Below are positions 21,055 to 41,629 of a DNA stretch of 64,000 nucleotides, one piece after another. The notes below the pieces were generated by a model. That model did not search any database. It saw nothing but the letters and a program-made list of their open reading frames with translations, and was not told where the DNA came from. The position numbers and the translations under genes were made by a program. Each line of letters begins with the position of its first letter. The first letter of the stretch is position 1. Source of the DNA: Octopus sinensis (Eukaryota); NCBI RefSeq assembly GCF_006345805.1, contig NW_021836314.1, forward strand, positions 1 through 64,000, in the 5' to 3' direction.

Positions 21055-21126
21055 AATTCCTCTAAGCTGTGAAGGCCTTGAAACATCTCCTTTTCAATCC
21101 TTGAAATTTTATTGTTGCCAAGGTTT
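21055..21126 (-). CDS. LRR cassette exon A1
   Basis: cttcag|...TT|gtaagt, 72 bp; NLGNNKISRIEKEMFQGLHSLEEL. Confidence 0.95.
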
Positions 21127-24032
21127 CTGAAGCAGGAAACAATATTGGTTAGATTGACATAGTGTGAATTGCGATAACATATTCAATATTGTTCTTTATG
21201 AAAAGGGAAAAAATATAGGAAAATAACACAAGAAGAAGAGGAACAGGAAAGAGATTGAGAAGAAGAAGAAGCCAAAGAAGAAGGGGAGGTGGGGAAGGGG
21301 AAACGGAGAAGACAAGGAGGAAGTGGAGGGGGAGAAGAAGTAGAAGAAGGAGGAGTTGGAGGAGGAGGAACGAAGGAGAGGAAAATGGCTGAGGACGGAG
21401 TAGGACAAGGAGATGAAGGAGGGGTGGGGGAAATAGGAGGAGGAGCAGAGGGTAGAGTAGAAGAAAAAGATGTAAATTATTAAAAAGAGGAGGAGGGTGA
21501 GGAGACGAAGAAGAATAGGCAAAAGAGAAGAAAAAGAAGAAGAAGAGGAAAAAGAAGAAGAAGAAGAAAGCGATGAAGAAGGAGGAGGAAGAGGAGAAGG
21601 AGGGAGAGAATTACAAAAAAGAAGATGAGAAAAAAAAGAAGAAGGAGGAGAAGGAGGAGAAGTAGAAGAAAGTAGAAGTAGGAGTGGAAGAAAAAGAGGA
21701 AGAAGAAAGAGGATAAGGAGGGGGAGGGGAAAGTAAGAATTACAAGAAGGAGGAGGAGGAGGAGAAGAAGAAGAAGAAGAAGAAGAAGAAGCAGAAGAAG
21801 AAAAAGGAGGAGGAGTAGAGGTAGAAGAAGAGGAAGAAGAACAGGAAGCTGTAGAAGAAAGAGAAGACGGAAGAAGAGGCAAGAGGTGGAGGAGGAGGAT
21901 GAAGGGGAAGAAGAAGTTAGAGAAAAGAAAAAAAGAAGAAGAAGGAGGAGGAGAATAACAAAATGAAACTATGAAGAAGAAAGAGCCGAAAGAGGAGAAG
22001 TAGATGAAGAAATAGAAAGTAGAATAAGAAGAAGTAGAGGAAAAAGAAAAATAAGGAGGAAGATGAGGAGGAGAAGTAGAAGAAGAAGAAGAAGAAGAAG
22101 AAGAAGAAGAAGAAGAAGGAGAAGAAGAAGAAGAAGAAGAAGAAGAAGAGGAGGAGGAGGAGGAGGAGAAGAAGAAGAAGTAGAAGTAGAAGAAGAAAGA
22201 AGAAGAAGAAGAAGAAAAGAAGACGAAGAACAAGAAGAAGGAAAAGGAGGAGGATGAAGGGGAAGAAGAAGAGAAAGGAGGAGGATGAGAAGAATATGAA
22301 GAAGTAGAAAGTGTAGAAGAGGTAGAAGACGAAGAAAAAAAGAAGTCGTAGAAAGAGAAGAAGAAAAGGAAAATGATGGAGGAAGACGGGGAACAGAAGT
22401 AGAAGAAGAAGACGAAGAAGGAGAAGAAGAAGGAGAATAAGAATTAGAAGAAGAAGAAGAAAAAGGAGCAAGAGAGGAGAGGGGTGGAGATGGACGAGAA
22501 TTACAAGAAGAAAAAGGAGGGGGTGGGGTGGTGAGAGGAGGAAGTGAATTACAAGAAGTAAATGTAGATGAAGAAGAAGAGAATAAAATTAGAAGAAGAA
22601 AAGAAAGAGGAGGAGGTGGAGGAGGAGAAGAAGAAGAATAGTTTAAAAGAAGGAGAAGAAGAAGAAATTGAAGAAGAGAAGAAAAAGAAGGAGGAGGATG
22701 ATGAGCAGGAGGTGAGGCGGAGGAAGGAGAAGACGAAGAAGAAGAAGAAGAAGAAGAAGAATAGTTTAAAAGAAGAAGGAGAAGAAGAAGAAAATGAAGA
22801 AGAAGAGAAGAAAGTAAGGATAGGAGGAGGCATGAGGTTGGCTAAGGAATAAGAAGAAGGAAGACTAAGACTAAGAATATAAGAAGAAGACGACGACGAC
22901 GAAGAAGAAGAATAAGAAGAAGAAGAGGAGGAAGAAGAAGAAGAATAGAAGAAGAAGAAGAAGAAGAAAAAGACGAAGACGAAGAAGAAGAAAGGAAGAA
23001 GAAGAAGGGGAGTAGAAGAAAAAGAAGAAGAAGAAGAAGAAAGAAGTTATATTGAAAATCATGGTGTTGAAGACGAAACTGAAATTGTTCTTAAAATATC
23101 AGGAAATAATTCAAGGATAGATCGATAAATTTTGGGCGAGAAGACATGGCTGAAAAATCATGGAATATACGGAATCAGAAATCAACATATTCAAATGCAC
23201 TCATACGCATTCTTATATTCATAGTATCAACGACGGAATGCGGTATGCACACTCACATCACACATATTCCCACTCACCCTTGTGGAAATATGGTGAGAGA
23301 GATTATTTCATATCGCTTCATTGTCAGAAGAATATTAGAAAACACACGCTTACAAGAAATATATCAGCAGTTTAATTGTATCAGGCCAAATATTCGAGCT
23401 TACAAGTACAGTATGTATTTCAGGTTTACAGATAGAATGTATGTGACTATATTATTCGAATATATATTTTCCGCTTCCAATTTAGTTGCTCTATTACATA
23501 AATAACGTGAAGTGAATGACAAAATTCGAAGTTGAATGATAATATCGAAACATGAAGGAGAATATTGAAATAGGAAATGGAGGAGGATGTAAAATATAAA
23601 ATAAAGGAATAATATATTCACATTTCACACAGAACTACACTTATATATGAACATACACAAATACTTCAGCTAAAAATATTTGATGCAAACATGTAAACTC
23701 ACAAACGTTACCATTTCTAATACAAATTCATATCAAAATCATTGAAATTGGGGAACAAAATGAGTTATTTAGATGCGAATTGAAACGAAGCAAGTACAAG
23801 AAAGGAACATTATATTTTTCCTATTATTTCACATTTTCTCTCAAATTCTCTCTCTTTCTTTCACATTGTCTCGCTCTCTCATATTCTTTTTGTATATTCC
23901 TAAATCGTGTTGATTCTACAAATTCGAATTGATTTTGTTTGGTGGAGTCTGAAATTTTATACATTTGTGAGCTTATATATCAGCATCAATTATTACATTC
24001 GGAAAATAATATCAAGAAACTGAAGAACTTAC

Positions 24033-24104
24033 AATTCTTTTAAATTGCAAAGCCCCGTGAATACACCTTCTTTGATGGTTGCAATGTTGTTGGAACCAAT
24101 ATTT
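24033..24104 (-). CDS. LRR cassette exon B1
   Basis: ctatag|...TT|gtaagt, 72 bp; NIGSNNIATIKEGVFTGLCNLKEL. Confidence 0.95.
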
Positions 24105-25348
24105 CTATAGCAGTAAAGAAAGAGTAAAATAGATTATATGGAAAATATTTGTGATACGACATCAAACACTGTGACTTCAGAATGAAAGGAAGAAAAAGAA
24201 GAAATATAACGAAGAAGAAAAAGAAGAAGAAGGAGAAGAAGAAGAAAAGAAGAAGAAGAAGAAGGTAGATGAAGAGAAGAAGAAGAATAAAAAGAAGAAT
24301 AAGGAGGAGGAAAAGGAGAAGAAGAAGAAGAAGAAGAAGTAGAAGAAAACGTAGAAGAAGAAAGGAGAAGATAAAGGAGAAGAAGACCTAGAAGAAGAAA
24401 AAGAAGAAGAGGAGGCGGAGGAGGCGGAGGAGGCGGAGGAGGCGGAGGAGGCGGAGGAGTCGGAGGTGGAGGAGAGGTGGGGATGTTAGGAGGAGGACAA
24501 AGGAATGGATGACTGAGGAGGGGCAGCTGGGGATAGCAGCAGAAGGAGCAGGAAGAGCAGGAGGATGAGTATAAGAGGAAGAATTGGAAGAGAATGGAAA
24601 AGAGGGAGACCATTGAAGAAGCAGAAAGTACAGAGAAGAAAAAGAACAAGAAAAAAAGAAGGCAAAGAAGAAGACAAAGAAGAAGTAGAACAGGAAGAAA
24701 AGTAACAAGAAGAAGAAGAAGATGAAGTAGAAGAAGAATAAGAGGAAGAAGAAGAAGAAGAAGACGACGAAGAAGAAGAGGAACATGCAGGAGATGAAGA
24801 AGGAAAGAAGAAGACGAAGAAGATGAAGAAGAAAAATAGAAGAAGAGAAAGAAGAAATTAAAGAAAAAGGAGGATGAGTAGGACGAAGAGGGGAGGTTGA
24901 GGAGAAGAATTGCAATAAGAAGAAGAAGAAAAAGGAGAAGGAGGTGGAGGAGGAGGGGGAATAGGAGAATTACAAGAAGAAGAACAAAACAACAACAATA
25001 ACAAAAAAATTATCTCGGTGGAAGTGTGGATAAATAACCACACGGCACCACAGAATCAACAGAACAATGTGAAATAAAATAGTAGCTAAAACTTATATTA
25101 ATAGTGCAGATACATACATACATATGAACATACACATATATATTTTCAGGAATAACATTTTTATGCAGACAATTATCAACTGACAGTCATTGACATGTTC
25201 AGACTCAATCAAATAAATATAAGACGAATATGAGAACTGAATATGATTTACAGTAATAGAGAGTGAGAAAACATGGAAATAAGGGGATATTAAATTTAAA
25301 GACATAGTATATTCCTCATGTATAAACGACAACATTGAATGAACTTAC

Positions 25349-25420
25349 AATATCTCTAAGTTGTGAAGGCCTTGAAACATCTCTTTTTCAATCCTTGAAA
25401 TTTTATTGAAGGAAAGAGAT
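25349..25420 (-). CDS. LRR cassette exon A2
   Basis: cttcag|...TT|gtaagt, 72 bp; SLSFNKISRIEKEMFQGLHNLEIL. Confidence 0.95.
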
Positions 25421-26454
25421 CTGAAGCAGGAAACAATATTGGTTAGATTGACATAGTGTGAGTTGCGATAACATATTCAATATTGTTCTTTATGAAGAGG
25501 GACAAAATTATAGGAAAATAATACAAGAAGGGGAACAGGAAAGAGATTGAGGAGAAGAAGAAGACAAAGACGAAGGGGAGGAGCGGAAGGGGAAACGGAG
25601 AAGACGAGGAGGAAAAGGAGGGGGGGAGAAGAAATAGGAGGAGTTCGAGGAGGAGGTGGGGAGGAGAAGAAAAAGCTTGAGGTCGGAAGAGGACAAGGAG
25701 ATGCAGGAGGGGTGGGGGAAATAGGAGGAGGAGCAGAGGGTAGAGTAGAAGAAAAAGATGTAAATTATTAAAAAGAGGAGGAGGAGGATGAGGAGACGAA
25801 GAAGAATAGGTAAAAGAAAAAGAAGAAGAAGAGGAAAAAGAAAAAGAAGTAGAAGAAGGCGATGAAGAAGGAAGAGGAAGAGGAGAAGGAGGGAGAGAAT
25901 TACAAAAAAGAAGATGAGGATAAAAAGAACGAGAAGGAGAAGGAGGAGAAGTAGAAGAAAGTAGAAGTGGGTTAGGAAGAAAAAGAAGAAGAAGAAGAAG
26001 GAGAAGTAGAAGAAGAATAAATGAAGTAGAAGAAAGAGAAGTTGAAGAAAAAGAAAAATAAATAGGAAGATGAGGAGGAGAAGTAGAAGAAGAACAACAA
26101 CAACAATAACAAAAAATTTATCCTGGTGGAAGTGTGGATAAATAACCACACGGCACCACAGAATCAACAGAACAATGTGTAAGAAAATAGTAGCTAAAAC
26201 TTGTATTAATAGTGCAGATACATACATACATATGAACATACACATATATTTTCAGGAATAACATTTTGATGCAGACAATTATCAACTGACAGTCATTGAC
26301 ATTTTCAGACTCAATCAAATAAATATAAGACGAATATGAGAACTGAATATGATTTACAGTAATAGAGAGTGAGAAAACATGGAAATAAGGGGATATTAAA
26401 TTTAAAGACATAGTATATTCCTCATGTATAAACGACAACATTGAAAGAACTTAC

Positions 26455-26526
26455 AATTTCTCTAAGTTGTGAAGGCCTTGAAACATCTCTTTTTCAATCC
26501 TTGAAATCTTATTGTTGCGAAGACCT
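26455..26526 (-). CDS. LRR cassette exon A3
   Basis: cttcag|...TT|gtaagt, 72 bp; GLRNNKISRIEKEMFQGLHNLEKL. Confidence 0.95.
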
Positions 26527-29153
26527 CTGAAGCAGGAAACAATATTGGTTAGACTGACATAGTGTGAATTGCGATAACATATTCAATATTGTTCTTTATG
26601 AAAAAGAACAAAATTATAGGAAAATAATATGAGAGGAAGAGGAACAGGAAAGAGATTGAGGAGAAGAAGAAGCCAAAGAAGAAGGGGAGGAGGGGAAGGG
26701 GAAACGGGGAAGACAAGGAGGAAGTGGAGGGGGAAAAGAAGTAGAAGAAGGAGGAGTTGGAGGAGAAGGAACGAAGGGGAGGAAAAAGGCTGAGGACGGA
26801 GTAGAACAAGGAGATGCAGGAGGGGTGAGGGAAATAGGAGGAGGAGCAGAGGGTAGAGTAGAAGAAAAATATGTAAATTATTAAAAAGAGGAGGAGGGTG
26901 AGGAGACGAAGAAGAATAGGTAAAAGAGAAGAAAAAGGAAAAGAAGAGGAAAAAGAAGAAGCAGAAGAAGGCGATGAAGAAGGAGGAGGAAGAGGAGAAG
27001 GAGGGGGAGAATTACAAAAAAGAAGATGAGAAGAAGAAGAAAGAGGATGAGAAGGAGAAGTAGAAGAAAGTAGAAGAAAGAGGATAAGGAGGGGGAGGGG
27101 AAAGGAAGAATTACAAGATGAGGAGAAGAAGAAGAAGAAGCAGAAGAAGAAAAGGAGGAGTAGAGGTAGAAGAAGAAGAAGAAGAACAGGAAGCAGTAGA
27201 AGAAAGAGAAGAAGAAGGAAGAGGGGGCAAGAGGTGGAGGAGGAGGATGAAGGGGAAGAAGAAGTTAGAGAAAAAGAAAAAAAGAAGAAGGAGGAGGAGA
27301 ATAACAAAATGAAAATATGAAGAAGAAAGAGCCGAAAGAGGAGAAGTAGACGAAGAAATAGAAAGTAGAATAAGAAGTAGAAGAAAATGAAATAGAAGAA
27401 AGAGAAGTTGAAGAAAAAGAAAAATAAGGAGGAAGATGAGGAGAAGTACAAGAAGAAGAAGAAGAAGAAGAAGAAGGAGGAGGAGGAGGAAGAGACGTAG
27501 AAGCAGAAGTAGAAAAAGAAGAAAAAGAAGAAGAAAAAAGAAGACGAATAAGAAGAAGGAAGAGGAGGAGGATGAAGGCGAAGAAGAAGAGAAAGGAGGA
27601 GGAGGAGAAGAATATGAAGAAGTATAAAGTGTAGAAGAAGTAGAAGACGAAAAAAAAAGAAGTGGTAGAAAGAGAAGAAGAAAAGGAAAAAGATGGAGGA
27701 AGACGGGGAACAGAAGTAGAAGAAGAAGACGAAGAAGGAGAAGAACAAGGAGAATAAGAATAAGAATTAGAAGAAGAAGAAGAAAAAGGAGCAAGAGAGG
27801 AGAGGGGTGGAGGTGGACGAGAATTACAAGAAGAAAAAGGAGGGGTGGGGTGGTGAGAGGAGGAAGTGAATTACAAGAAGTAAATGTAGATGAAGAAGAA
27901 GAGAATAAAATTAGAAGAAGAAAAGAAAGAGGAGGAGGTGGAGGAGGAGAAGAAGAAGAATAGTTTAAAAGAAGGAGAAGAAGAAGAAATTGAAGAAGAG
28001 AAGAAAAAGAAGGAGGAGGATGATGAGCAGGAGGTGAGGCGGAGGAAGGAGAAGAAGACGAAGAAGAAGAAGAAGAAGAAGAAGAAGAAGACGACGACGA
28101 CGAAGAAGAAGTAAAAGAAGAAGGAGAAGAAGAAAAGAAGAAGAAGAAGAAGAAGAAAGAAGAAGAAGAAGAAGAAGAAGATACATTAAAAATCATTGTC
28201 TTCAAGACGACCCTTAAAATGTTTTCATAATATCAGGAAATAATTCAAGGATAGAATGAAAAATTTTGGGCGAGAAGACATGGCTGAAAAATCATGGAAT
28301 ATACGGAATCAGAAATCAACATATTCAAATGCACTCATACGCATTCTTATATTCACAGTATCAACGACGGAATGCGCTCTGCACACTCACATCACACATA
28401 TTCCCACTCACCCTTGCGGAAATATGGTGAGAGAGATTATTTATTTAATATCGCTTCATTGTCACAAGAATATTAGAAAACACACGCTTACAAGAAATAT
28501 ATCAGCAGTTTAATTGTATCAAGCCAAGTATTCCAGCTTATAAGTACAGTAAGTATTTCAGGTTTACAGATAGATGTATGTGACTATATTATTCGAATAT
28601 ATATTTTCCGCTTCCAATTCAGTTGCTCTATTACATAAATAACGTGAAGTGAATGACAAAATTCGAAGTTGAATGATAATATCGAAACACGAAGGAGAAT
28701 ATTGAAATAAGAAATGGAGGAGGATGTAAAATATAAAATAAAGGAATAATATAGTCACATTTCACACAGAACTACACTTATATATGAACATACACATATA
28801 CTTCAGCTAAAAATGTAACCTCACAAACGTTACCATTTCTAATACAAATTCATATCAAAACCTTTGAAATTTGGGGAACAAAAAAGAGTTAATGAGATGC
28901 GAATTGAAACAAAGCAACTACAAGAAAGGAACATTATATTTTTCCTATTATTTCACTTTCTCTCTCAAATTCTCTCTCTTTCTTTCACATTGTCTCGCTC
29001 TCTCATATTCTCTTTGTATCTTCCTAAATCGTGTTCATTCTTCAAATTCGAATTGATTTTGTTTGGTGCAGTCTGAAATATTATATATTTGTGAGCTTAT
29101 ATATCAGCATCATTACTTTCGGAAAATAATATCAAGAAATTGAACAAACTTAC

Positions 29154-29225
29154 AATGTCTTTAAATTCGAAAGGCCCGTGAATAAACCTTCTTTGATGGT
29201 TGAAATGTTGTTCCATCTCAGATCT
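29154..29225 (-). CDS. LRR cassette exon B2
   Basis: ctatag|...TT|gtaagt, 72 bp; DLRWNNISTIKEGLFTGLSNLKTL. Confidence 0.95.
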
Positions 29226-30390
29226 CTATAGCAGTAAAGAAAGAGTAAAATAGATTATATGGAAAATATATGTGATACGACACCAAACACTGTGATTTCA
29301 GAATGAAAGGAAGAAAAAGAAGAAAGATAACGAAGAAAAAGAAGAAGTAGACGGAGGAGGAGGAGAAGAAGTAGAAGAAGAAGATGAGTAGAAGAAGAAA
29401 GTAGAAGAAGGAGAATTGGGCAGGAGGTGGAGGGGGCGGAAGAGAAGGTGTAGTGGGGAGGTTAGGAGGAGGACCAAGGAATGGATGACTGAGGAGCGGC
29501 AGCTGGGGGTAGAAGCAGAAGGAGCAGGAAGAGCATGAGAATGAGAATAAGAGGAAGAATTGGCAGAGAATGGAAAAGAGGGAGACAAGTGACGGAGCAG
29601 AAAGTACAGAGAAGAAAAAGAAGAAGAAAAAAAGAAGAAGAAGAAGAAGAAGAAGAAGAAGAAGAAAAATAGAAGAAGAATACAAATAAGTAGAAAAATA
29701 AGAAGAAAAAAAGAAGGCAAAGAAGAAGACAAAAAAGAAGTAGAACACGAAGAAAAGTAACAAGAAGAAGAAGTAGATGAAGTAGAAGAAGAAGAAGACG
29801 ACGAAGAAGAAGAGGAACATGTAGGAGATGAAGAGGGAAAGAAGAAGACGAAGAAGATGAAAAAAAAGAAAAATAGAAGAAGAGAAAGAAGAAATTGAAG
29901 AAAGAGTAGGATGAGTAGGACGAAGAGGGGAGGTTGAGGAGGAGAATTGCAATAAGAAGAAGAAAAAGGAGGAGAAGGAGGTGGAGCAGGAGGGAGAATA
30001 GGAGAATTACAAGAAGAAGAACAAAACAACAACAACAACAATAAAAAAAATTTATTTCGGTGGAAGTGTGGATAAATAACCACACGGCACCACAGAATCA
30101 AGAGAACAATGTGTAAGAAAATAGTAGCTAAAACTTATATTAATAGTGCAGATACATACATACATATGAACATACACATATATATTTGCAGGAATTACAT
30201 TTTTATGCAGACAATTATCAACTGACAGTCATTGACATGTTCAGACTCAATCAAATAAATATAAGACGAATATGAGAACTGAATATGATTTACAGTAATA
30301 GAGAGTGAGAAAACATGGAAATAAGGGGATATTAAATTTAAAGACATAGTATATTCCTCATGTATAAACGACAACATTGAATGAACTTAC

Positions 30391-30462
30391 AATTTCTCTA
30401 AGTTGTGAAGGCCTTGAAACATCTCCTTTTCAATCCTTGAAATTTTATTGCTGTCAAGAGAT
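30391..30462 (-). CDS. LRR cassette exon A4
   Basis: cttcag|...TT|gtaagt, 72 bp; SLDSNKISRIEKEMFQGLHNLEKL. Confidence 0.95.
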
Positions 30463-31284
30463 CTGAAGCAGGAAACAATATTGCTTAGATTGACATAGTG
30501 TGAATTGCGATAACATATTCAATATTGTTCTTTATGAAAAGGGACAAAATTATAGGAAAATAATACAAGAGGAACAGGAAAGAGATTGAGGAGAAGAAGA
30601 AGACGAAGAAGGGGATGAGGGGAAGCGGAAAAGAAGAAGACTAGGAGGAAAAGGAGGGGGAGTAGAAGTAGAAGAAGGAAGAGTTGGAGGAGGAGGAGGG
30701 GAGAAGAAGAAGAAGGAGGAGGACTGAAGAGGACAAGGAGATGAAGGAGAGAAAGGAACATAGGAGGAGGATGGGCAGAGGAAAAGAAGACAAAGAAGAA
30801 GAGGAGGAGGGGAAGGGGAAAATAAGAAGACAAGGAGGAAGAGGAGTTGGGAGAAGAAGTAGAAGGAGGAGGAGGAGAAGGATGAGTAGGAGGAGTAGGC
30901 GGAGATGAGGAGAAGTAGGTTGAGGACGGGGGAGGACAATGAGATGCAGGAGGGGGAATAGGAGGAGGAGGAGGAATGGGAGGAGTAGAAGAAGAAGATG
31001 TAGAAGATTAAAAAGAGGAGGAAGAAAAAGAAGATATAGAAGAATGAAGGGGATGGAGAGGAGAAGAATAATAAGAAGAAGAAGCAGGAAAAAGAAGAGG
31101 AAGAAGAAGTAGATGAAGAAGAAGAAGAAGAAGAAAAAGAAGAAGGAGAAGGAAATGGAGGAAAAGAGATGGATGACGAAGAAGGGGAAGGAGAAGAAGG
31201 AGAAGAAGAAGAAGAACAACAACAACAACAAGAATAAGAAGAAGAAGTAGGAGGAAGAGGAGGAGAATAACAAAATGAAGAAGA

Positions 31285-31315
<31 letters not shown>

Positions 31316-32456
31316 AAGGAGGAGGAGGAAAAGTAGAAGAAGAAAAGAACAAAAAGAAGAAGAAGGAGAAGAAGAAGACGACGACGACGAAGAAGAAGTA
31401 GAAGAAGAAGAAGGAGAAGAAGAAGAAGAAGAAGTAAAAGAAGAAGAAGAAGAAGAAGAAGAAGAAGAAGAAGATACGTTGAAAATCATGGTGTTCAAGA
31501 CGAAACTGAAAATGTTGTCATAATATCAGGAAATAATTCAAGGATAGAGCGGTAAATTTTGGGCGAGAAGACATGGCTGAAAAATCAGGGAATATACGGA
31601 ATCAGAAATCAACATATTCAAACGCACTCATTCGCATTCTTATAGTCATAGTATCAACGACGGAATGCGCTATGCACACTTACATCACTCATAATCCCAC
31701 TCACACTTGTGGAAATATGGTGAGAGAGATTATTTATTTCATATCGCTTCATTGTCAGAAGAATATTAGAAAACACACGCTTACAAGAAATATATCAGCA
31801 GTTTAATTGTATCAGGCCAAATATTCCAGCTTACAAGTACAGAAAGTATTTCAGGTTTACAGATAGAATGTATGTGACTATATTATTCGAATATATTTTC
31901 CGCTTCCACTTCAGTTACATAAATAACGTGAAGTGAATGACAAAATTCGAAGTTGAATGATAATATCGAAACACGAAGGAGAATATTGAAATAAGAAATG
32001 GAGGAGGATGTAAAATATAAAATAAAGGAATAATATAGTCACATTTCACACAGAACTACACTTATATATGAACATACACATATACTTCAGCTAAAAGTAT
32101 TTGATGCAAACATGTAAACTCACAAACGTTACCATTTCTAATACAAATTCATATCAAAACCTTTGAAATTTGGGGAACAAAAATGAGTTATTGAGATGCA
32201 AATTGAAACAAAGCAACTACAATAAAGGAACATTGTATTTTTCCTATTATTTCACTTTCTCTCTCAAATTCTCTCTCTTTCTTTCACATTGTCTCGCTCT
32301 CTCATATTCTTTTTGTATCTTCCTAAATCGTATTCATTCTACAAATTCGAATTGATTTTGTTTGGTGCAGTCTGAAAGTTTATACATTTGTGAGCTTATA
32401 TGTCAGCATCAATTATAACTTTCGGAAAATAGTATCAAGAAATTAAACGAACTTAC

Positions 32457-32528
32457 AATTCTTTTAAATTTGAAAGCCCCGTGAATGTACCTTCTTTGAT
32501 GGTTGAAATGTTGTTCTCGTACAGATCT
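32457..32528 (-). CDS. LRR cassette exon B3
   Basis: ctatag|...TT|gtaagt, 72 bp; DLYENNISTIKEGTFTGLSNLKEL. Confidence 0.95.
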
Positions 32529-33830
32529 CTATAGCAGTAAAGAAAGAGTAAAATAGATTATATGGAAAATATTTGTGATTCGATATCAAACACTGTGACT
32601 TCAGAATGAAAGGAAGAAAAAGAAGAAAGATAACGAAGAAGAAGAAGAAGAAGAAGAAGAAGAAGAAGAAGAAGAAGAAGATTAAAACAGGAAAAGAAGA
32701 AGAAGAAGAAAGGAAAAGAAGAAGAAAAAGAAAGAAAAAGGAGAAGAAGAAGCAGTAGTAGAAGAAAAAGAAAAGTAGAAGAAGGGGAATTAGGGACGAG
32801 GTGGAGGATGTGGGGGTGGAGCAGAGGTGGGGAGGTTAGGAGGAGGACAAAGGAAGGGATGCCTGTTCAGGGGGCCGCTGAGGGTAGCAGCTGAAGGAGC
32901 AGGAAGAGCTGGAGACTGAGAATAAGAGGGAGAATTGGCAGAGAATGGAAAAGAGGGAGACCAGTGACGGAGCATAAAGTACAGAGAAGAAAAAGAAGAA
33001 GAAGAAGACAAAGAAGAAGAAGAAGAACAAAATTAGAAGAGGAAGAAGGAGGAGGAGAAGAAGTAGAAGAAGAAGCAGAAGAAGAAGAAAACAAAGAAAA
33101 TTAAGAAGAAGAAGAAAAAAGAAGGCAAAGAAGAAGTAGAACACGAAGAAAAGTAACAAGAAGAAGAATAAGTAGAAGAAGAAGAAGAGGAAGAAGAAGA
33201 AGACAAAGAAAAGAAGAAGAAGAAGAAGAGGAAGAAGAAGAAGACGACGAAGAAAAGGAACATGAAGGAGATGGAGAAGGAAAGAAGAAGACGAAGAAGA
33301 TGAAGAAGAAGAAAAATAGAAGAAGAGGAAAAAGAAATTGAAGAAAAAGGAGGATGAGTAGGACGAAGAGGGCATGTTGAGGAGGAGAATTGCAATAAGA
33401 AGAAGAAAATGAGGAGAAGGAGGTGGAGGAGGAGGGGGAATAGGAGAATTACAAGAAGAAGAACAAAACAACAACAACAACAACAAAAATATTATCTCGG
33501 TGGAAGTGTGGATAAATAACCACACGGCACCACAGAATCAAGAGAACAATGTGTAAGAAAATAGTAGCTAAAACTTATATTAATAGTGCAGATACAGACA
33601 TACATATGAACATACACATATATATTTTCAGGAATAACATTTTTATGCAGACAATTATCAACTGACAGTCATTGACATGTTCAGACTCAATCAAATAAAT
33701 ATAAGACGAATATGAGAACTGAATATGATTTACAGTAATAGAGAGTGAGAAAACATGGAAATAAGGGGATATTAAATTTAAAGACATAGTATATTCCTCA
33801 TGTATAAACGACAACATTGAAAGAACTTAC

Positions 33831-33902
33831 AATTCCTCTAAGCTGTGAAGGCCTTGAAACATCTCCTTTTCAATCCTTGAAATTTTATTGTAGGAAAGAT
33901 CT
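33831..33902 (-). CDS. LRR cassette exon A5
   Basis: cttcag|...TT|gtaagt, 72 bp; DLSYNKISRIEKEMFQGLHSLEEL. Confidence 0.95.
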
Positions 33903-35555
33903 CTGAAGCAGGAAACAATATTGGTTAGATTAACATAGTGTGAATTGCGATAACATATTCAATATTGTTCTTTATGAAGAGGGACAAAATTATAGGAAAA
34001 TAATACAAGAAGAAGGGGAACAGGAAAGAGATTAAGGAGAAGATGAAGAAGAAGAAAGAGAGGAGGGGAAGGGGAAAAGAAGAAGTCAAGGAGGAAGAGT
34101 AGGGGGGAGAAGAAGTAGAAGAAGGAGGAGTTGGAGGAGGAGGAGGAGGAGGGGAGGTGAAGTAGGATGAGGACAGGGAAGGACAAGGAGATGCAGGAGG
34201 GGGAGGAAAATAGGAGGAGGTGCAGAGGGTAGAGTATAAGAAGATATAGAAGATTAAAAGTGGAGGAAGAAAAAGAAGTAGAAGGAAGAGGAGGGTGAAA
34301 AGAAGAAAAAGAAGAAGAAGAAAAAGAAGAAGTAAAACGAGAAGAAGAAGCGGAAAATGAAGAAGAAGTAGAAGCAGGAAAAAAGGAGAAGAAGGAAGAA
34401 GAGAAAAATAGGTGGAGGCGGAGGTGGAAGAGGAAGGGGAAGAAGAAGAAGACAGATGAGAAGGAGGAGGAGGAGGAGGAGGAGGAAGGGGAAGTAGAAG
34501 AAAAAGAAGGAGGAGAAGGAGGAGGAGGAAGAGTAGTAGAAGAAGAAGAATAAGATGAAGAAGAAGAAGATGACACTTTGAATATCATGGTATTCAAGAT
34601 GAATCTGGAAATGTTCTCAAGATATCAGGAAATAATTCAAGGATAGATCGAGAAATTTTGGGCGAGAAGACATGGCTGAAAACTCAGGGAATATACGAAA
34701 TCAGAAATCAACATATTCAAATGCACTCATACGCATTTTTATTTTCATAGTATCAACAACGGAATGCGGTATGCACACTCACATCACACATAATCCCACT
34801 CACACTTGTGGAAATATGGTGAGAGAGATTATTTATTTCATATCGCTTCATTGTCACAAGAATATTAGAAAACACACGCTTACAAGAAATATATCAGCAG
34901 TTTAATTGTATCAGGCCAAATATTCCAGCTTACAAGTACAGAAAGTATTTCAGGTTTACAGATAGAATGTATGTGACTATATTATTCGAATATATATTTT
35001 CCGCTTCCACTTCAGTTACATAAATAACGTGAAGTGAATGACAAAATTCGAAGTTGAATGATAATATCGAAACACGAAGGAGAATATTGAAATAAGAAAT
35101 GGAGGAGGATGTAAAATATAAAATAAAGGAATAATATAGTCACATTTCACACAGAACTACACTTATATATGAACATACACATATACTTCAGCTAAATGTA
35201 TTTGATGCAAACATGTAAACTCACAAACGTTACCATTTCTAATACAAATTCATATCAAAATCATTGGAATTTGGGGGAAAAATGAGTTATTGAGATGCGA
35301 ATTGAAACAAAGCAACTACAATAAAGGAACATTATATTTTTCCTATTATTTCACTTTCTCCCCCAAATTCTCTCTCTTTCTTTCACATTGTCTCGCTTTC
35401 TCCTATTCTCTTTGTATCTTCTTAAATCTTGTTCATTCTACAAATTTGAATTGATTTTGTTTAGTTCAGTCTGAAATTTTATACATTTGTGAGCTTATAT
35501 ATCAGCATCAATTAATACTTTCGGATAATAGTATCAAGAAATTAAACGAACTTAC

Positions 35556-35627
35556 ACTGTTTTTAAATTGGAAAGCCCCGTGAATACACCTTCTTTGATG
35601 GTTGAAATGTTGTTCCCGAAAAGATAT
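35556..35627 (-). CDS. LRR cassette exon B4
   Basis: ctatag|...GT|gtaagt, 72 bp; YLFGNNISTIKEGVFTGLSNLKTV. Confidence 0.95.
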
Positions 35628-37610
35628 CTATAGCAGTAAAGAAAGAGTAAAATAGATTATATGGAAAATATTTGTGATACGACATCAAACACTGTGACAT
35701 CTGAATGAAAGGAAGAAAAAGAAGAAAGATAACGAAGAAGAAAAGGAAGAAGAAGGAGGAGGAGGAGGCGAAGAGGAAGAAAAGTAGAAGAAGAAGAATT
35801 AGTAGAAGAAGAAAGGAGAAGAGGTAGTAGAAGAAAAAGAAGCGAAAGAAGGAATACCTGGAAAAAGGAGGAGGAGGATGATAAAAGGGAAGAAGAAGTA
35901 GAAGAAAAAGTAAAAGAAGAAGAAGAAGGGGATGGGAGGAAAAGAATAACAAGAAGAAGAAGATAAATATAAGAAAGACGAGGAGGAGGAGGAGGAGAAG
36001 TAGGTGAAGAAGTAGAAATAAGAAGAAGAAGAAGGAGAAGAAGAACAACAACAAGTCGAAATAGAAGGAGGATGAGGAGGGGGAGGGGAAGAAGAAATAT
36101 TGCAAGAAGAAGGAAGGAAAGAACAGGAAGAAGAAGATGTAGAAGTAGTAGAAGCAAGAAAAAGAAGAAAGATAACGAAGAAGAAAAGGAAGAAGAAGGA
36201 GGAGGAGGAGGAGGCGAAGAGGAAGAAAAGTAGAAGAAGAAGAATTAGTAGAAGAAGAAAGGAGAAGAGGTAGTAGAAGAAAAAGAAGCGAAAGAAGGAA
36301 TACCTGGAAAAAGGAGGAGGAGGATGATAAAAGGGAAGAAGAAGTAGAAGAAAAAGTAAAAGAAGAAGAAGAAGGGGATGGGAGGAAAAGAATAACAAGA
36401 AGAAGAAGATAAATATAAGAAAGACGAGGAGGAGGAGGAGGAGAAGTAGATGAAGAAGTAGAAATAAGAAGAAGAAGAAGGAGAAGAAGAACAACAACAA
36501 GTCGAAATAGAAGGAGGATGAGGAGGGGGAGGGGAAGAAGAAATATTGCAAGAAGAAGGAAGGAAAGAACAGGAAGAAGAAGATGTAGAAGTAGTAGAAG
36601 CAAGAAAAAGAAGAAGAAGATGAAGGAGGTGGAGGAGAAGGAGATAGAGAATAACAAAAACAGAAGTGAAGAAGAAGAAGGAGGAGGAGGAGGAGTAGAA
36701 GAAGAAGTAGAAAGAAGAAGAGGAAGAAAAAAAGAAAAAGACAAAGAAGAAGAAGAAGGAAGGGGAGGAAAAAGGAGGAGGAGGAGTGTGAAGGAGGAGA
36801 ATAAGTAGGAGAACATGAAAAAGAAGAAGAAGATGAAGGAGGAGGAGGTTGAGAATAACAAAAAGAAGAATATAAGAAGAAGAAAGAGGAGTAGGAGGAG
36901 AAGTAGATGAAGAAGTAGAAAGTAGTGGTAGAAGAAGACATAGAAGAAGAAGAAAAAAGAAGTAGAAGAATGAGAAGAAGAAATGAAAAAGAAGAAGGAA
37001 GGAACAGAAGAAGAAGAATTAGAAGAAGAAGCAGAAGAAGAAGAAAAAGTTGCAGGAGAGGAGGGGAGGAGGAGAATAACAAGAAGAAAAAGGAGGAGGC
37101 GCGGAGAGGATTGGGTAGAAAAAAAGTAGAGGAAAAAAGAAGTAGAAGAAGGAAGAGGAAAAAGGAGGAGGAAGGAGATGAAAGGGAAAAAGTAGGGGTA
37201 GAAGAAAAAGAAGAAGAAGAAGAACAAGGAGGAGGAGGAGGAGGAGGAGTAGATGAAGAAGTTGAAAGTAGAAGAGGAAGAAGTGGAAGAAGAAGAAAAA
37301 AGGAGAAGCGAGAGAAGAAGAAGAAGAAAAAGAAGAAGAAGAAGGAGGAGAAGAAGGTGCAGCAGGAGGAGAGGAACAGAAGGAAGAAGAAGAAAAAGAA
37401 GAAGAAGAAGAAGAAGAAGAAGAAGAACAAAGGAGAAGAAGGAGCAGCAGGAGGAGAGGAAGAGAAGGAAGAAGAAGAAAAAGAAGAAGAAGAAGAAGGA
37501 AAATAAGAAGAAGAAGAAGGAAAAGAAGAAGAAGAAGGCAGAATACGAAATGACAAAAAGATGAAGAAGAAGGCGGAAAAGGAGAAATAGAATAAGAAAA
37601 AGAACAAAAA

Positions 37611-37642
<32 letters not shown>

Positions 37643-38847
37643 AAAATATAAAGCGGGAGAAGAAGAAGAAGAAGAAGAACAACAACAACAACAAAAAGAA
37701 GAAAAAGAGGAAGAAGAAGAAGAAGAAGTGGAAAAAGAAAAAGATAAAGAGGGAGAAGAAGAAGAACAACAGAAGAAGAAAAAGATAAAGAGGGAGAAGA
37801 AGAAGAAGAAGAAGGAGAAGAAAAAGAAGAAGAAAAAGAAGAAGAAGAAGAAGAAGAAGAAGATGACAATTTAAAAATGATGGTGTTCATGATGAAACTG
37901 AAAATGTTCTCATAATATCAGGAAATAATTCAAGGATAGAGCGATAAATTTTGGGCGAGAAGACATGGCTGAAAAATCAGGGAATATACGGAATCAGAAA
38001 TCAACATATTCAAATGCACTCATACGCAATCTTATATTCATAGTATCAACGACGGAATGCGGTATGCACACTTACATCACACATATTCCCACTCACCTTT
38101 GTGGAAACATGGTGAGAGAGATTATTTATTTCATATCGCTTCATTGTCACAAGAATATTAGAAAACACACGCTTACAAGAAATATATCAGCAGTTTAATT
38201 TATCAGGCCAAATATTCCAGCTTACAAGTACAGTAAGTATTTCAGGTTTACAGATAGAATGTATGTGACTATATTATTCGAATATATATTTTCCGCTTCC
38301 ACTTCAGTTACATAAATAACGTGAAGTGAATGACAAAATTCGAAGTTGAATGATAATATCGAAACACGAAGGAGAATATTGAAATAAGAAATGGAGGAGG
38401 ATGTAAAATATAAAATAAAGGAATAATATAGTCACATTTCACACAGAACTACACTTATATATGAACATACACATATACTTCAGGTAAAAATATTTGATGC
38501 AAACATGTAAACTCACAAACGTTACCATTTCTAATACAAATTCATATCAAAATCATTGAAATTTGGGAACAAAAATGAGTTATTGAGATGCGAATTGAAA
38601 CAAAGCAACTACAATAAAGGAACATTATATTTTTCCTATTATTTCACTTTCTCTCTTAAATTCTCTCTCTTTTTTCACATTGTCTCGCTCTCTCCTATTC
38701 TCTTTGTATCTTCCTAAATCGTATTCATTTTACAAATTTGAATTGATTTTGTTCGGTGTAGTCTGAAATATTATACATTTGTGAGCTTATATATCAGCAT
38801 CAATTATTACGTTCGGAAAATAATATCAAGAAACTGAACGAACTTAC

Positions 38848-38919
38848 AATTCTTTTAAATGTGAAAGCCCCGTGAATGCTCCTTCTTTGATGGTTGCAAT
38901 GTTGTTGTTCCACAGTTCT
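38848..38919 (-). CDS. LRR cassette exon B5
   Basis: ctatag|...TT|gtaagt, 72 bp; ELWNNNIATIKEGAFTGLSHLKEL. Confidence 0.95.
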
Positions 38920-39758
38920 CTATAGCAGTAAAGAAAGAGTAAATTAGATTATATGGAAAAAATATGTGATACGACATCAAACACAGTGACATCTGAATGA
39001 AAGGAAGAAAAAGAAGAAAGATAACGAAGAAGAAGAAGAAGAAGAAGAAGAAGGGAAGAAGAAGAAGAAGAAGGAGAAGAAGAAGAAGAAGAAGAAGAAG
39101 AAGAAGAAGAGGAAGTAAAAGAAGACGAAGACAAAGAAAAGGAAGAAGAAGAAGAAGAAGAGGAAATAGAAGAAGACGACAAAGAAGACGGAACATGAAG
39201 GAGATGAAGAAGGAAAGAAGAAGAGGAAGTATAAAAAGAAGAAAAAGAAGAAGAGAAAGAAGAAATTGAAGAAAAAGGAGGATGAGTAGGACGAAGAGGG
39301 GAGGTTGAGGAGGAGAATTGCAATAAGAAGAAGAAAATTAGGAGAAGGAGGTGGACGAGGAGGGGGAATAGGAGAATTACAAGAAGAAGAACAAAAACAA
39401 CAACAACAACAACAAAAATATTATCTCGGTGGAAGTGTGGATAAATAACCACACGGAACCTCAGAATCAACAGAACAATGTGTAAGAAAATAGTAGCTAA
39501 AACTTATATTAATAGTGCAGATACAGACATACATATGAACATACACATATATATTTTCAGGAATAACATTTTTATGCAGACAATTATCAACTGACAGTCA
39601 TTGACATTTCAGACTCAATCAAATAAATATAAGACGAATATGAGAACTGAATATGATTTACAGTAATAGAGAGTGAGAAAACATGGAAATAAGGGGATAT
39701 TAAATTTAAAGACATAGTATATTCCTCATGTATAAACGACAACATTGAAAGAACTTAC

Positions 39759-39830
39759 AATTTCTCTAAGCTGTGAAGGCCTTGAAACATCTCTTTTTCA
39801 ATCCTTGAAATTTTATTGTAGCCAAGATCT
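39759..39830 (-). CDS. LRR cassette exon A6
   Basis: cttcag|...TT|gtaagt, 72 bp, phase 2-2; DLGYNKISRIEKEMFQGLHSLEKL. Confidence 0.95.
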
Positions 39831-41557
39831 CTGAAGCAGGAAACAATATTGGTTAGATTAACATAGTGTGAATTGCGATAACATATTCAATATTGTTCTT
39901 TATGGAAGGAGACAAAATTATAGGAAAATATACAGAAGAAGAGGAACGAAAGAGATTAAGGAGAAGAAGAAGAAGAAGAAGAAGAAGAAGAAGAAGAAGA
40001 AGAAAGAGAGGAGGGGAGGGAAAAGAAGAAGTCAAGGAGGAAGAGAAGGGGGGAGAAGAAGTAGAAGAAGGAGGAGTTGGAGGAGGAGGGGAGGTGAAGA
40101 AGGATGAGGACAGGGAAGGAAAGGAGATGCAGGAGGGGGAGGAAGGGAGGAAAATAGGAGGAGGTGCAGAGGATAGAGTATAAGAAGATATAGAAGATTA
40201 AAAAGTGGAGGAAGAATAAGATGAAGTAGAAGGGAGAAGAAAGGGGAGGAGGAGAAGAAGAGAAGAGGAAGAAGAGAGGAGAAGAAGAAGAAGGAGAGAA
40301 GAGAAAGAAGAAGTAAAAGGAGAAGAAGAGCGGAAGAAAATGAAGAAGAAGAAGAAGCATGAAAAAAGAAGGAGAAAAAGAAAAAGAAGGAGAAGAAGGA
40401 AGAAGAGGAAAATAGGTGGAGGCGGAGGAGTAGGAGGAAGCGGAAGGAGAAGAAGAGGACAAAGGAGAAGGAGGAGGAAGAGAAGTAGGAGAAGAAGAAG
40501 AAGAAGAAGAAGAAGAAGAAGAAGAAGAAGAAGAAGAAGAAGAAGAAAAGAAGAAGAAGAAGATGACACTTTGAATATCATGGTGTTGAAGACGAAACTG
40601 AAATTGTTCTTAAAATATCAGGAAATAATTCAAGGATAGATCGATAAATTTTGGGCGAGAAGACATGGCTGAAAAATCAGGGAATATACGGAATCAGAAA
40701 TCAACATATTCAAATGCACTCATACGCATTCTGATATTCATAGTATCAACGACGGAATGCGGTATGAACACTCACATCACACATATTCCCAATCACACTT
40801 GTGGAAATATGGTGAGAGAGATTATTTATTTCATATCGCTTCATTGTCACAAAAATATTAGAAAACACACGCTTACAAGAAATATATCAGCAGTTTAATT
40901 GTATCAGGCCAAATATTCCAGCTTACATGTACAGTAAGTATTTCAGGTTTACAGATAGAATGTATGTGACTATATTATTCGAATATATATTTCCCGCTTC
41001 CAATTCAGTTGCTCTATTACATAAATAACATGAAGTGAATGATAAAATTCGAAGTTGAATGATAATATCGAAACACGAAGGAGAATATTGAAATAAGAAA
41101 TGGAGGAGGATGCAAAATATAAATAAAGGAATAATATAGTCACATTTCACACAGAACTACACTTATATATGAACATACACATATACTTCAGCTAAAAATA
41201 TTTGATGCAAACATGTAAACTCACAAACGTTACCATTTCTAATACAAATTCATATCAAAATCATTGAAATTTGGGGAACAAAACTGAGTTATTGAGATGC
41301 GAATTGAAACAAAGCAACTACAATAAAGGAACATTATATTTTTCCTATTATTTCACTTTCTCCCCCAAATTCTCTCTCTTTCTTTCACATTGTCTCGCTC
41401 TCTCCTATTCTCTTTGTATCTTCCTAAATCTTGTTCATTCTACAAATTTGAATTGATTTTGTTTGGTTCAGTCTGAAATTTTATACATTTGTGAGCTTAT
41501 ATATCAGCATCAATTAATACTTTTGGATAATAGTATCAAGAAATTAAACGAACTTAC

Positions 41558-41629
41558 ACTTTTTTTTAAATTGGAAAGCCCCGTGAATACACCTTCTTTG
41601 ATGGTTGAATGTTGTTCTCGGAAAGATAT
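41558..41629 (-). CDS. LRR cassette exon B6 (72 bp; compensating -1/+1 homopolymer indels give an in-frame TAA as assembled)
   Basis: ctatag|A...GT|gtaagt; restores to YLSENNISTIKEGVFTGLSNLKKV by comparison with the five sister B exons. Confidence 0.85.

What the first reader, a model, noticed from the sequence alone, without database searches (positions are those of the whole stretch)
25421..38847. Cassette gain/loss junctions fall inside the (GAA)n polypurine tracts
Seen: regular introns pair an A acceptor-flank with a B core, or the reverse. Intron 25421-26454 has an A flank and an A core (B exon missing). Intron 35628-38847 has a B flank and a B core (A exon missing). In both, the switch lies within the GAA tract. 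Established: long GAA/TTC tracts form triplex/H-DNA and R-loops and promote instability (Friedreich ataxia repeat); purine-rich repeats mark Ig switch regions. Inference: the tracts act as built-in recombination hotspots that shuffle whole LRR exons in frame, possibly also somatically.
Basis: partly seen in the sequence, partly recalled or inferred. Interest (0 to 1): 0.78.

Follow-up and report, generated by a model that had tools for sequence, protein, structure and literature searches.

The report
Octopus LRR exons reshuffled at GAA-tracts
An octopus gene built from twelve near-identical 72-base leucine-rich-repeat exons has gained or lost exons by mis-paired exchange inside the degenerate GAA-rich stretch found in every intron, which looks like ordinary unequal recombination at a shared simple repeat and gives no sign of a programmed or somatic shuffling system.

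Summary
The window holds a minus-strand Octopus gene: signal peptide, LRRNT, twelve 72-nt same-phase LRR exons of two alternating types (A, B), LRRCT and a Cys-rich tail. Along the + strand each intron reads acceptor flank, purine tract, unique core.

- **A|A intron (25421-26454):** it has an A flank and an A core. I mapped the joint to a (GAA)3 run at 26086-26097, at the tract/core edge.
- **B|B intron (35628-38847):** it has a B flank and a B core separated by 2.17 kb of tract. The joint cannot be mapped more finely.
- **Third case:** a decayed 13th cassette (20026-20257) gives another A|A-type intron.

- The tract is the only sequence shared by A>B and B>A introns, so any homology-guided out-of-register event must land there.
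- Random breakage would give the same result with p of about 0.09.
- In-register exchange is frequent throughout the unique cores.
- The tracts are degenerate: at most 19 pure GAA units, and a pyrimidine every 8-15 nt in most tracts.
- The transcript carries UUC, the wrong orientation for FXN-type or switch-region R-loops.
- Nothing indicates somatic events.

More interesting side findings are hypervariable concave-face codons in otherwise homogenised cassettes, and 13 exon-skipping isoforms annotated in O. sinensis.

The parts
45502..45692 (-). Exon 1: start codon, signal peptide and LRRNT. It ends ...GAATATTT|GTAAGT, the same phase as all the cassettes.
   Evidence: tblastn match 100% to O. 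sinensis XP_036355613 residues 1-64; sequence read.
41558..41629 (-). LRR exon B6, 72 nt. It carries an internal -1/+1 frameshift and a stop, so it is a pseudo-exon or a sequencing error.
39759..39830 (-). LRR exon A6
   Evidence: identical to a module of O. sinensis isoform X1
38848..38919 (-). LRR exon B5
35628..38847 (-). The B|B intron (B4>B5 along +). It consists of B acceptor flank 35628-35701, purine tract 35702-37870 and B core 37871-38847.
35709..36615 (.). 446-bp tandem duplication (2.0 copies, 98-100% identical) inside the B|B tract. It starts at the end of the B flank.
35556..35627 (-). LRR exon B4
33831..33902 (-). LRR exon A5. It differs at 4 of 24 residues from the corresponding O. 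sinensis module.
32457..32528 (-). LRR exon B3
30391..30462 (-). LRR exon A4
29154..29225 (-). LRR exon B2
26455..26526 (-). LRR exon A3
25421..26454 (-). The A|A intron (A2>A3 along +). It consists of A acceptor flank 25421-25524, an A>B-type purine tract 25525-26097 and A core 26098-26454. It lacks the ~130-nt purine-rich 'pre-core' that the four ordinary B>A introns carry.
26086..26097 (.). Mapped A|A breakpoint. A GAAGAAGAA run lies between an A>B-tract-specific motif (...GAGGAGGAGAAGTAGAA) and the first bases of the A core (CAACAACAATAAC).
   Evidence: (specific match 25998-26094 to 21993-22087 and 27363-27460)
25349..25420 (-). LRR exon A2. It is spliced directly to LRRCT in all O. sinensis models.
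24033..24104 (-). LRR exon B1. It has intact splice sites but is absent from all O. sinensis models.
21055..21126 (-). LRR exon A1. It has intact splice sites but is absent from all O. sinensis models.
20026..20257 (-). A0psi, a decayed 13th cassette. It holds an A-core fragment (20037-20089, 79-81%) plus the exon tail and A acceptor flank (20134-20260, ~76%). Together with tract 20258-20696 and the A1 core it forms a third A|A-type intron.
19576..42228 (+). The array with its 14 purine-tract pieces; GAA-like on +, so (UUC)n-like in the pre-mRNA. T0a 19576-20025, T0b 20258-20696, T1 21225-23051, T2 24179-24970, T3 25525-26097, T4 26626-28186, T5 29298-30006, T6 30567-31479, T7 32601-33449, T8 34002-34573, T9 35702-37870, T10 38994-39376, T11 39934-40569, T12 41701-42228.
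13582..13741 (-). LRRCT exon (acceptor ...TTATTACAG|T TAC CTC...).
5654..8904 (-). Three C-terminal exons (8904-8814, 6855-6667, 5680-5654) that encode a Cys-rich, probably three-finger/Ly6-like domain and the tail.
   Evidence: domain assignment weak

Best explanation
The locus is a tandem array of single-LRR exon cassettes in an Octopus-specific gene for a signal peptide, LRRNT, LRR(n), LRRCT and Cys-rich protein. In the sense direction each cassette is (UUC)n-like tract, acceptor flank, 72-nt exon, donor-side core. Two cassette types alternate.

The array evolves in the germline in the way tandem repeats usually do. In-register gene conversion keeps flanks and cores 92-100% alike. Occasional out-of-register exchange or replication slippage adds or removes cassettes.

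The degenerate GAA-rich tract is the only sequence that A>B and B>A introns share, and it is slippage-prone. Mis-paired events that break the A/B alternation therefore have their joints in the tract.

Shown:
- The chimeric make-up of the A|A intron, with its joint in a (GAA)3 run.
- Flank + tract + core architecture of the B|B intron and of the relic A0psi>A1 intron.
- The phase symmetry of the exons.
- Mosaic cores and indel-rich tracts.

Inferred:
- That the mechanism was unequal crossing-over or microhomology-mediated slippage.
- Whether each event was a loss of one cassette, a duplication of one cassette, or the joint of a larger A-A-B block duplication. These give the same joint.

On this reading the tracts are passive, convenient substrates and not specialised structure-driven or somatic switch elements.
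For: - Gene model and cassette phase.
- Chimeric A|A intron and (GAA)3 joint.
- B|B intron architecture.
- Relic cassette giving a third A|A-type intron with the same truncated core edge.
- The tract is the only similarity between the intron classes, and A and B exons are only about 70% alike.
- In-register exchange throughout the unique parts (Rm at least 5 and at least 26), with nearest paralogue changing every 100-200 nt at 96-100% identity.
- Colinear tract homology T1~T4, T2~T5, T7~T10 and T8~T11, showing block-wise duplication or conversion.
- Tract indel excess (22 against 1).
- Germline fixation: A3-A2 is adjacent in all 16 O. sinensis RefSeq models from two scaffolds and B5-B4 in X5. 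The window differs from those sequences at several residues, so it is an independent sequence.
Against: - With only two or three junctions, the enrichment in tracts is not significant against random breakage (p about 0.09). The passive-substrate and active-hotspot readings are therefore not separated statistically.
- The B|B joint cannot be mapped.
- The duplication history is not resolved. The left part of T3 is closest to T1/T4 and not to T6, which a simple A-B-A block duplication would predict.
- No reads were available, so the assembly of the 2.2-kb tract and its 446-bp duplication is unverified.
Confidence: 0.7

Rival explanations
1. One reading: the GAA tracts are active, structure-forming (H-DNA/triplex, R-loop) break hotspots that raise the rate of in-frame LRR cassette shuffling, possibly also in somatic cells.
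For: - All parity-breaking joints lie in tracts, and one lies in a pure GAA run.
- The tracts are indel-rich and contain recent internal duplications.
- Short perfect purine mirror repeats of 18-59 nt exist in every tract.
- Long GAA repeats are known to be unstable through triplex formation (PMC6983365).
Against: - The longest pure run is (GAA)19. Most tracts (12 of 14 pieces) have a pyrimidine every 8-15 nt, and GGA/GAG variants break mirror symmetry. Non-mirror purine repeats were more than 10-fold more stable in yeast.
- The transcript is UUC-rich, giving the least stable RNA:DNA hybrid type and the opposite orientation to FXN and Ig switch regions (own knowledge).
- The tract location of the joints is already forced by homology.
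- The junctions are shared with O. sinensis gene models, so they are old and germline.
- There are no data on somatic variation.
Confidence: 0.12
2. The tracts matter mainly at the RNA level. As long (UUC)n-like polypyrimidine stretches 70-105 nt upstream of every cassette acceptor, they bind pyrimidine-tract proteins (PTB-like) and make the cassettes optional. Their role as recombination joints would be incidental.
For: - The tract is pyrimidine-rich on the sense strand and starts 71-104 nt from each 3' splice site.
- RefSeq lists 13 isoforms of the O. sinensis gene that differ only by skipping of 24-aa cassettes.
- All exons share one phase.
Against: - This is inference only. The isoforms are computational models, and some carry chimeric exons that may be alignment artefacts.
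- Each exon has its own ordinary polypyrimidine tract and plausible branch sites in the unique flank.
- No binding or splicing data are available.
- This reading is not exclusive of the best explanation.
Confidence: 0.2
3. The A|A and B|B adjacencies are assembly errors, with a cassette dropped while assembling through low-complexity tracts.
For: - The tracts are long and low in complexity.
- The B|B tract contains a 98-100% identical 446-bp tandem duplication.
- B6 carries compensating 1-nt indels that could be read errors.
- The O. sinensis copies sit on short unplaced scaffolds.
Against: - A3-A2 adjacency appears in all 16 O. sinensis models from two scaffolds, and B5-B4 in X5. The window differs from both scaffolds.
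- The neighbouring exons are clearly different from each other: A2/A3 are 88.9% identical and B4/B5 77.8%.
- The A|A joint is a clean hybrid with specific tract markers right up to the core.
- Exon skipping could, however, mimic adjacency in mRNA models.
Confidence: 0.07

Closest known systems
Exon duplication or deletion by unequal (non-allelic) recombination between intronic repeats, such as Alu-Alu events in human genes; tandem exon duplication generally (own knowledge)
   Same: Same-orientation repeats sit in consecutive introns. The joint is a hybrid of two repeat copies. Symmetric-phase exons keep the frame. Both gain-type and loss-type products are seen.
   Different: The repeat is a degenerate trinucleotide tract and not an interspersed element. 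It is itself part of the duplicated unit. The resolved joint has only about 9-12 nt of identity, which fits slippage or microhomology as well as classical crossing-over.
Friedreich-ataxia-type (GAA)n instability and GAA-stimulated recombination (PMC6983365; other work from own knowledge)
   Same: The motif is a GAA/TTC homopurine-homopyrimidine sequence in an intron, with evident length instability.
   Different: Pure runs reach at most 19 units, against 66 or more in disease and 124 in the yeast assay. The tracts are heavily interrupted and mostly lack mirror symmetry. The sense strand is TTC, so the RNA is UUC.
Immunoglobulin class-switch regions
   Same: Repetitive purine-rich DNA lies in introns upstream of alternative coding units, and deletion between the repeats would join new units.
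   Different: The non-template strand here is pyrimidine-rich, and no G-clusters or AID-type motifs define the tract. Every unit is a normal exon removed or kept by splicing. There is no evidence of somatic deletion.
Lamprey/hagfish VLR genes
   Same: The protein layout is LRRNT, variable 24-aa LRR modules, LRRCT and a C-terminal tail. Variability is concentrated on concave-face residues.
   Different: The germline gene here is complete, and each module is a spliceable GT-AG exon. VLR germline genes are incomplete and are assembled by copy-choice from flanking cassettes that are not exons (own knowledge).
Genes with one LRR per 72-nt exon (SLIT, LGR and glycoprotein-hormone receptor families; own knowledge); RefSeq names this gene 'slit homolog 1 protein-like'
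   Same: Each 24-residue LRR is encoded by one 72-nt exon, with LRRNT and LRRCT caps.
   Different: This is not a SLIT orthologue. It is a short protein with one LRR domain and a Cys-rich tail, and relatives were found only in Octopus. The cassettes are near-identical recent paralogues with homogenised introns.

Membership tests
Repeat-mediated unequal exchange causing tandem exon gain or loss | Similar sequence in direct orientation in the introns that pair out of register | tested here: met
   All 14 tract pieces are GAA-like on the + strand. Tract-to-tract identity is 0.65-0.85 everywhere.
Repeat-mediated unequal exchange causing tandem exon gain or loss | The junction is a hybrid whose left part derives from one intron class and whose right part derives from the other | tested here: met
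   In the A|A intron, A>B-type sequence runs to 26094 and A core starts at about 26098. For the B|B intron only the two ends can be assigned.
Repeat-mediated unequal exchange causing tandem exon gain or loss | The units are exchangeable without breaking the reading frame | tested here: met
   All 12 exons are 72 nt and share one phase. Exon 1 and the LRRCT exon have the same phase.
Repeat-mediated unequal exchange causing tandem exon gain or loss | Copy-number differences between individuals or species | tested here: inconclusive
   O. sinensis models never contain B1 or A1 and use a different A5. No genomic DNA of the orthologue could be fetched.
Friedreich-type structure-forming GAA hotspot | A long uninterrupted mirror-symmetric (GAA)n run | tested here: not met
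   The longest run is 19 units and the longest perfect purine mirror repeat is 18-59 nt. Pyrimidines occur every 8-15 nt in 12 of 14 tract pieces. The mirror-symmetry requirement is from PMC6983365.
Friedreich-type structure-forming GAA hotspot | GAA on the sense strand, giving a purine-rich transcript for stable R-loops | tested here: not met
   The gene is on the minus strand and the tracts are GAA on the + strand, so the RNA is UUC.
Friedreich-type structure-forming GAA hotspot | Measured excess of breaks or rearrangements at the tract | not testable with these tools
   This needs reads, or S1-END-seq or DRIP data.
Ig-switch-like somatic deletional recombination | Somatic DNA differences between cells or tissues | not testable with these tools
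   Only a single assembly was available. The adjacencies shared with O. sinensis models argue for germline structures.
Ig-switch-like somatic deletional recombination | A G-rich non-template strand | tested here: not met
   The non-template (sense) strand is C/T-rich. GC skew on + is +0.36 to +0.82 over the array, and the gene is on the minus strand.
VLR-type LRR cassette assembly | An incomplete germline gene whose modules are non-exonic donor cassettes | tested here: not met
   The gene is complete and every module has canonical splice sites.
VLR-type LRR cassette assembly | Hypervariable concave-face residues in otherwise conserved modules | tested here: met
   Pairwise difference in the first 16 nt of the exon is 0.28 (A) and 0.41 (B), against 0.008-0.043 in the adjacent intron. 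Fisher p=1.8e-5 for A.
Combinatorial cassette-exon splicing array | Several transcripts that differ by whole cassettes | tested here: inconclusive
   Sixteen RefSeq models have 5-8 cassettes. They are computational predictions, and no transcript data could be examined.

The most novel reading that the evidence does not exclude
The symmetric, tract-flanked LRR cassettes could be a diversity-generating receptor locus in a cephalopod. Stochastic cassette choice would be driven by the (UUC)n tracts at the RNA level, or, less likely, by tract-mediated somatic DNA rearrangement. Either would give individual cells different LRR receptors with hypervariable binding faces. That would be a functional parallel to Dscam or VLR.
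Probability: 0.05. Interest if true: 0.9.

Novelty: new member of a known kind. Interest (0 to 1): 0.4.

Why it matters
The locus is a clean, sequence-resolved example of how a simple repeat carried inside a duplicated exon unit lets a repeat-protein gene change its module number in frame. It also shows concerted evolution of introns alongside strong diversification of a few binding-face codons.

The gene family appears to be Octopus-specific and unstudied. If cassette usage proves to be combinatorial in vivo, it would be a candidate recognition-diversity system in a lineage where none is known. The specific claim of a triplex- or R-loop-driven or somatic hotspot has no support in the sequence.

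Tried and rejected
- **Orthologous DNA:** I tried to fetch genomic DNA for the O. sinensis proteins P0001, P0002 and P0064. None is on record, so no cross-species junction comparison was possible.
- **Finer B|B mapping:** window identity profiles, 200-nt painting and rare k-mers gave only non-colinear short matches between about 35830 and 37795. Rare k-mers lean towards A>B-type tracts (4-7:1 against the 2:1 expected from length), which is too weak to place the joint.
- **Simple loss of a B exon:** I considered this for the A|A intron. It is not distinguishable from duplication of one A cassette or from the joint of an A-A-B block duplication. The relic A0psi>A1 intron and the colinear T1~T4 and T2~T5 homology favour a block history. 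However, the left part of T3 resembles T1/T4 more than T6.
- **Decayed B exon inside the A|A intron:** rejected, because no B-core or B-exon remnant is there.
- **Distant branch point created by the tract:** rejected, because AG dinucleotides and branch-like motifs lie in the unique flank.
- **C-terminal domain:** Pfam and PDB sequence searches gave only non-significant three-finger-type hits.
- **Literature:** searches found no description of this gene family.
Full report
**What is there.** The window is eukaryotic, about 35% G+C and rich in microsatellites. Purine skew is strong only between 19.5 and 42.3 kb. In that stretch the minus strand carries twelve exons of exactly 72 nt. They have GTAAGT donors, CAG/TAG acceptors and one shared phase, with a Leu/Phe codon split TT|N.

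Each exon encodes one 24-residue leucine-rich repeat, of two types:
- A: xLxxNKISRIEKEMFQGLHxLExL
- B: xLxxNNI(S/A)TIKEGxFTGLSNLKxL

Along the + strand the order is A1 B1 A2 A3 B2 A4 B3 A5 B4 B5 A6 B6. B6 has a -1/+1 frameshift with a stop.

**The gene and its relatives.**
- Exon 1 (45692-45502) encodes the signal peptide and LRRNT.
- An LRRCT exon lies at 13741-13582.
- Three further exons (8904-5654) encode a Cys-rich tail.
- The best database matches are Octopus sinensis RefSeq proteins named 'slit homolog 1 protein-like'.
- The C-terminal half finds relatives only in O. sinensis, O. vulgaris and O. bimaculoides.
- The window differs from the O. sinensis proteins at several residues and shares 'SGIICN' with an O. 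vulgaris protein. It is therefore an independent sequence from the O. vulgaris/sinensis group.
- The Cys-rich tail gives only non-significant hits to three-finger folds (activin receptor, uPAR/Ly6).

**Intron anatomy.** Read along the + strand, every intron is an acceptor flank (71-104 nt, unique), then a purine tract (383-2169 nt), then a unique core. The core is about 360-380 nt before A exons and about 970-990 nt before B exons. In the sense direction a cassette is therefore (UUC)n-like tract, acceptor flank, exon, core.

The nine regular inter-cassette introns pair an A flank with a B core or a B flank with an A core. The four ordinary B>A introns also carry a conserved purine-rich 'pre-core' of about 130 nt next to the A core.

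**The A|A intron (25421-26454).**
- Its left side, 25421-25996, aligns at 88-100% with the left part of A1>B1 and A3>B2.
- The next 97 nt (25998-26094) match a more distal marker of the same two tracts (21993-22087 and 27363-27460). Bit scores are 110 and 108, against 70 or less for every other tract position.
- From about 26098 (CAACAACAATAAC...) the sequence is A core, 90-100% identical to all A cores.
- The switch is thus confined to a GAAGAAGAA run at 26086-26097.
- In the left-hand relatives the same marker is followed by perfect (GAA)13 and (GAA)8 runs. In the A1 upstream tract a perfect (GAA)17 abuts the core. Ordinary pre-cores end in (GAA)3C.
- The joint is therefore in a pure GAA run, but at the last bases of the tract, and the pre-core is missing.

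**The B|B intron (35628-38847).**
- B-flank-side homology is clear to about 35750-35830, and B-core-side homology starts at about 37795.
- The 2 kb between is tract at background identity.
- It contains a 98-100% identical 446-bp tandem duplication at 35709-36615.
- Rare k-mers do not give a colinear assignment.
- 'In the tract' holds by exclusion only.

**A third case.** The tract upstream of A1 is split by 20026-20257. This piece is a decayed cassette, here called A0psi. It has a fragment of A core (79-81%), the tail of an A exon and an A acceptor flank (~76%). A0psi>A1 is therefore another intron with A flank + tract + A core, and it also lacks the pre-core. It may be a paralogous copy of the same ancestral joint as A2>A3.

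**Is the tract location more than chance?**
- Tract makes up 0.505 of A>B intron sequence and 0.60 of B>A intron sequence.
- Random intronic breaks would put both ends in tract with p=0.30 per event and 0.09 for two events.
- More importantly, the tract is the only similarity between the two intron classes. A and B exons are only about 70% alike, and flanks and cores are unrelated.
- Any homology- or microhomology-guided event that changes A/B parity can therefore only occur in the tract.

**Exchange is not confined to tracts.**
- Informative sites in the unique parts of the cassettes are highly mosaic.
- Four-gamete tests need at least 5 exchange points in 522 nt of A unit and at least 26 in about 1257 nt of B unit.
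- Painting each 200-nt window by its best paralogue shows cores at 96-100% identity, with the nearest copy changing every 100-200 nt. Most tract windows have only background matches.
- Some tracts are colinear paralogues (T1~T4, T2~T5, T7~T10, T8~T11). This shows block-wise duplication or conversion.
- Tracts are much more indel-prone than cores. There are 22 indels of 10 nt or more in about 3.6 kb of paired tracts, against 1 in about 3.1 kb of paired cores.

The picture is concerted evolution of a tandem array with slippage-prone simple repeats.

**Structure-forming potential.**
- The tracts are 88-93% purine. Twelve of the 14 pieces have a pyrimidine every 8-15 nt (T0a has one per 45 nt and T0b one per 19 nt).
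- The longest (GAA)n run is 19 units, and perfect purine mirror repeats reach 18-59 nt.
- In yeast, (GAA)124 instability depended on triplex-forming mirror symmetry. Non-mirror purine repeats such as GAAGGA were more than ten-fold more stable (PMC6983365).
- The gene is transcribed from the minus strand, so the RNA carries UUC and the non-template strand is pyrimidine-rich.
- That is the opposite of FXN and of Ig switch regions, where a purine- or G-rich transcript stabilises R-loops (own knowledge).

**Reality and age of the junctions.**
- Sixteen O. sinensis RefSeq models from two scaffolds all contain A3 followed directly by A2, and isoform X5 contains B5 followed by B4.
- These are computational models, and exon skipping could mimic adjacency.
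- Even so, they agree with the window and indicate old germline structures rather than assembly noise or somatic events.
- No model contains B1 or A1, although both have intact splice sites here. This could be a copy-number difference between lineages, but no orthologous DNA could be fetched.

**Verdict.** The tracts are where out-of-register cassette gain or loss has been resolved, in one case at a pure GAA run. This follows from their being the only shared, slippage-prone sequence. Nothing supports a triplex- or R-loop-driven or somatic mechanism.

It is a new example of a known process, namely repeat-mediated tandem exon duplication or deletion with concerted evolution.

**Side observations.**
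- The first 16 nt of each exon are 10-30 times more divergent than the adjoining intron (0.28 and 0.41 against 0.008-0.043; Fisher p=1.8e-5 for A). They encode the x positions of xLxxN on the concave face.
- Whole exons are also less alike than their flanking introns: 78-94% against 91-98% for the cores. This suggests diversifying selection against a background of homogenisation.
- RefSeq predicts 13 isoforms that differ by whole cassettes.

Together with the sense-strand polypyrimidine tracts, these observations leave open a low-probability but interesting reading as a combinatorial recognition receptor.

Noticed in passing
window, all 12 LRR exons (e.g. 25405-25420, 35612-35627 = first 16 nt in sense): The first 16 nt of each exon (the x positions of xLxxN, on the concave face) are hypervariable. 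Pairwise difference is 0.28 (A) and 0.41 (B), against 0.008-0.043 in the adjacent intron. Whole exons (78-94% identical) are less alike than their intron cores (91-98%). This fits diversifying selection on binding residues within a homogenised array.
   Followed up: partly
window 21055-45692 (-); O. sinensis XP_036355612-623, XP_036355417-419: RefSeq predicts 13 + 3 isoforms that differ only by whole 24-aa cassettes (5-8 per protein). The 3' block B3 A4 B2 A3 A2 is nearly constitutive and the 5' cassettes are optional. No model includes both B4 and the A5-like module.
   Followed up: partly
window 21055-21126 and 24033-24104: Exons A1 and B1 have intact splice sites, but they appear in no O. 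sinensis model, where A2 is always spliced straight to LRRCT. This may be a lineage-specific gain, constitutive skipping, or an incomplete O. sinensis assembly.
   Followed up: no
window 41558-41629: Exon B6 has a 1-nt deletion and a 1-nt insertion about 40 nt apart, giving an internal frameshift and a stop. Several RefSeq models join the head of B6 to the tail of B5 or B3, as if avoiding the same lesion.
   Followed up: partly
window 20026-20257: A decayed 13th cassette (A0psi) lies between two tract pieces. It has an A-core fragment, the exon tail and an A acceptor flank at 76-81% identity. Its divergence is far higher than among the live cassettes, which suggests that the similarity of the live copies reflects ongoing conversion rather than youth.
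   Followed up: yes
window 35709-36615: A 446-bp tandem duplication, 98-100% identical, lies inside the longest tract. It is either a very recent expansion or an assembly artefact.
   Followed up: partly
O. sinensis models X2, X4, X7, X8, X13 and g2-X3: These models contain chimeric B modules (B6 or B4 head joined to a B5 or B3 tail within the shared ACCATCAAAGAAGG stretch). They could be alignment or RT template-switch artefacts, cryptic GT-AG use, or hybrid exons of other alleles.
   Followed up: no
window 5654-8904 (-): The C-terminal Cys-rich domain (about 10 Cys) has only weak similarity to three-finger folds (activin receptor ECD, uPAR/Ly6). Proteins with this LRRCT + Cys-rich tail were found only in Octopus species, some without LRRs.
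   Followed up: partly
O. sinensis XP_036355774-777 (P0064, P0135-P0137): A paralogue shares a 92% identical exon 1 but has only B-like modules (STIKEGAFTGLSNLKEL), again in several cassette-skipping isoforms. B|B adjacency is therefore normal elsewhere in the family.
   Followed up: no
window 1-19000 and 42300-64000: There are many other microsatellites, including (TA)n, (TATG)n, (TGTA)n, (ATG)n and (AC)n, but no GAA-type tract outside the LRR array. The tracts belong to the duplicated unit and are not a general property of the region.
   Followed up: partly
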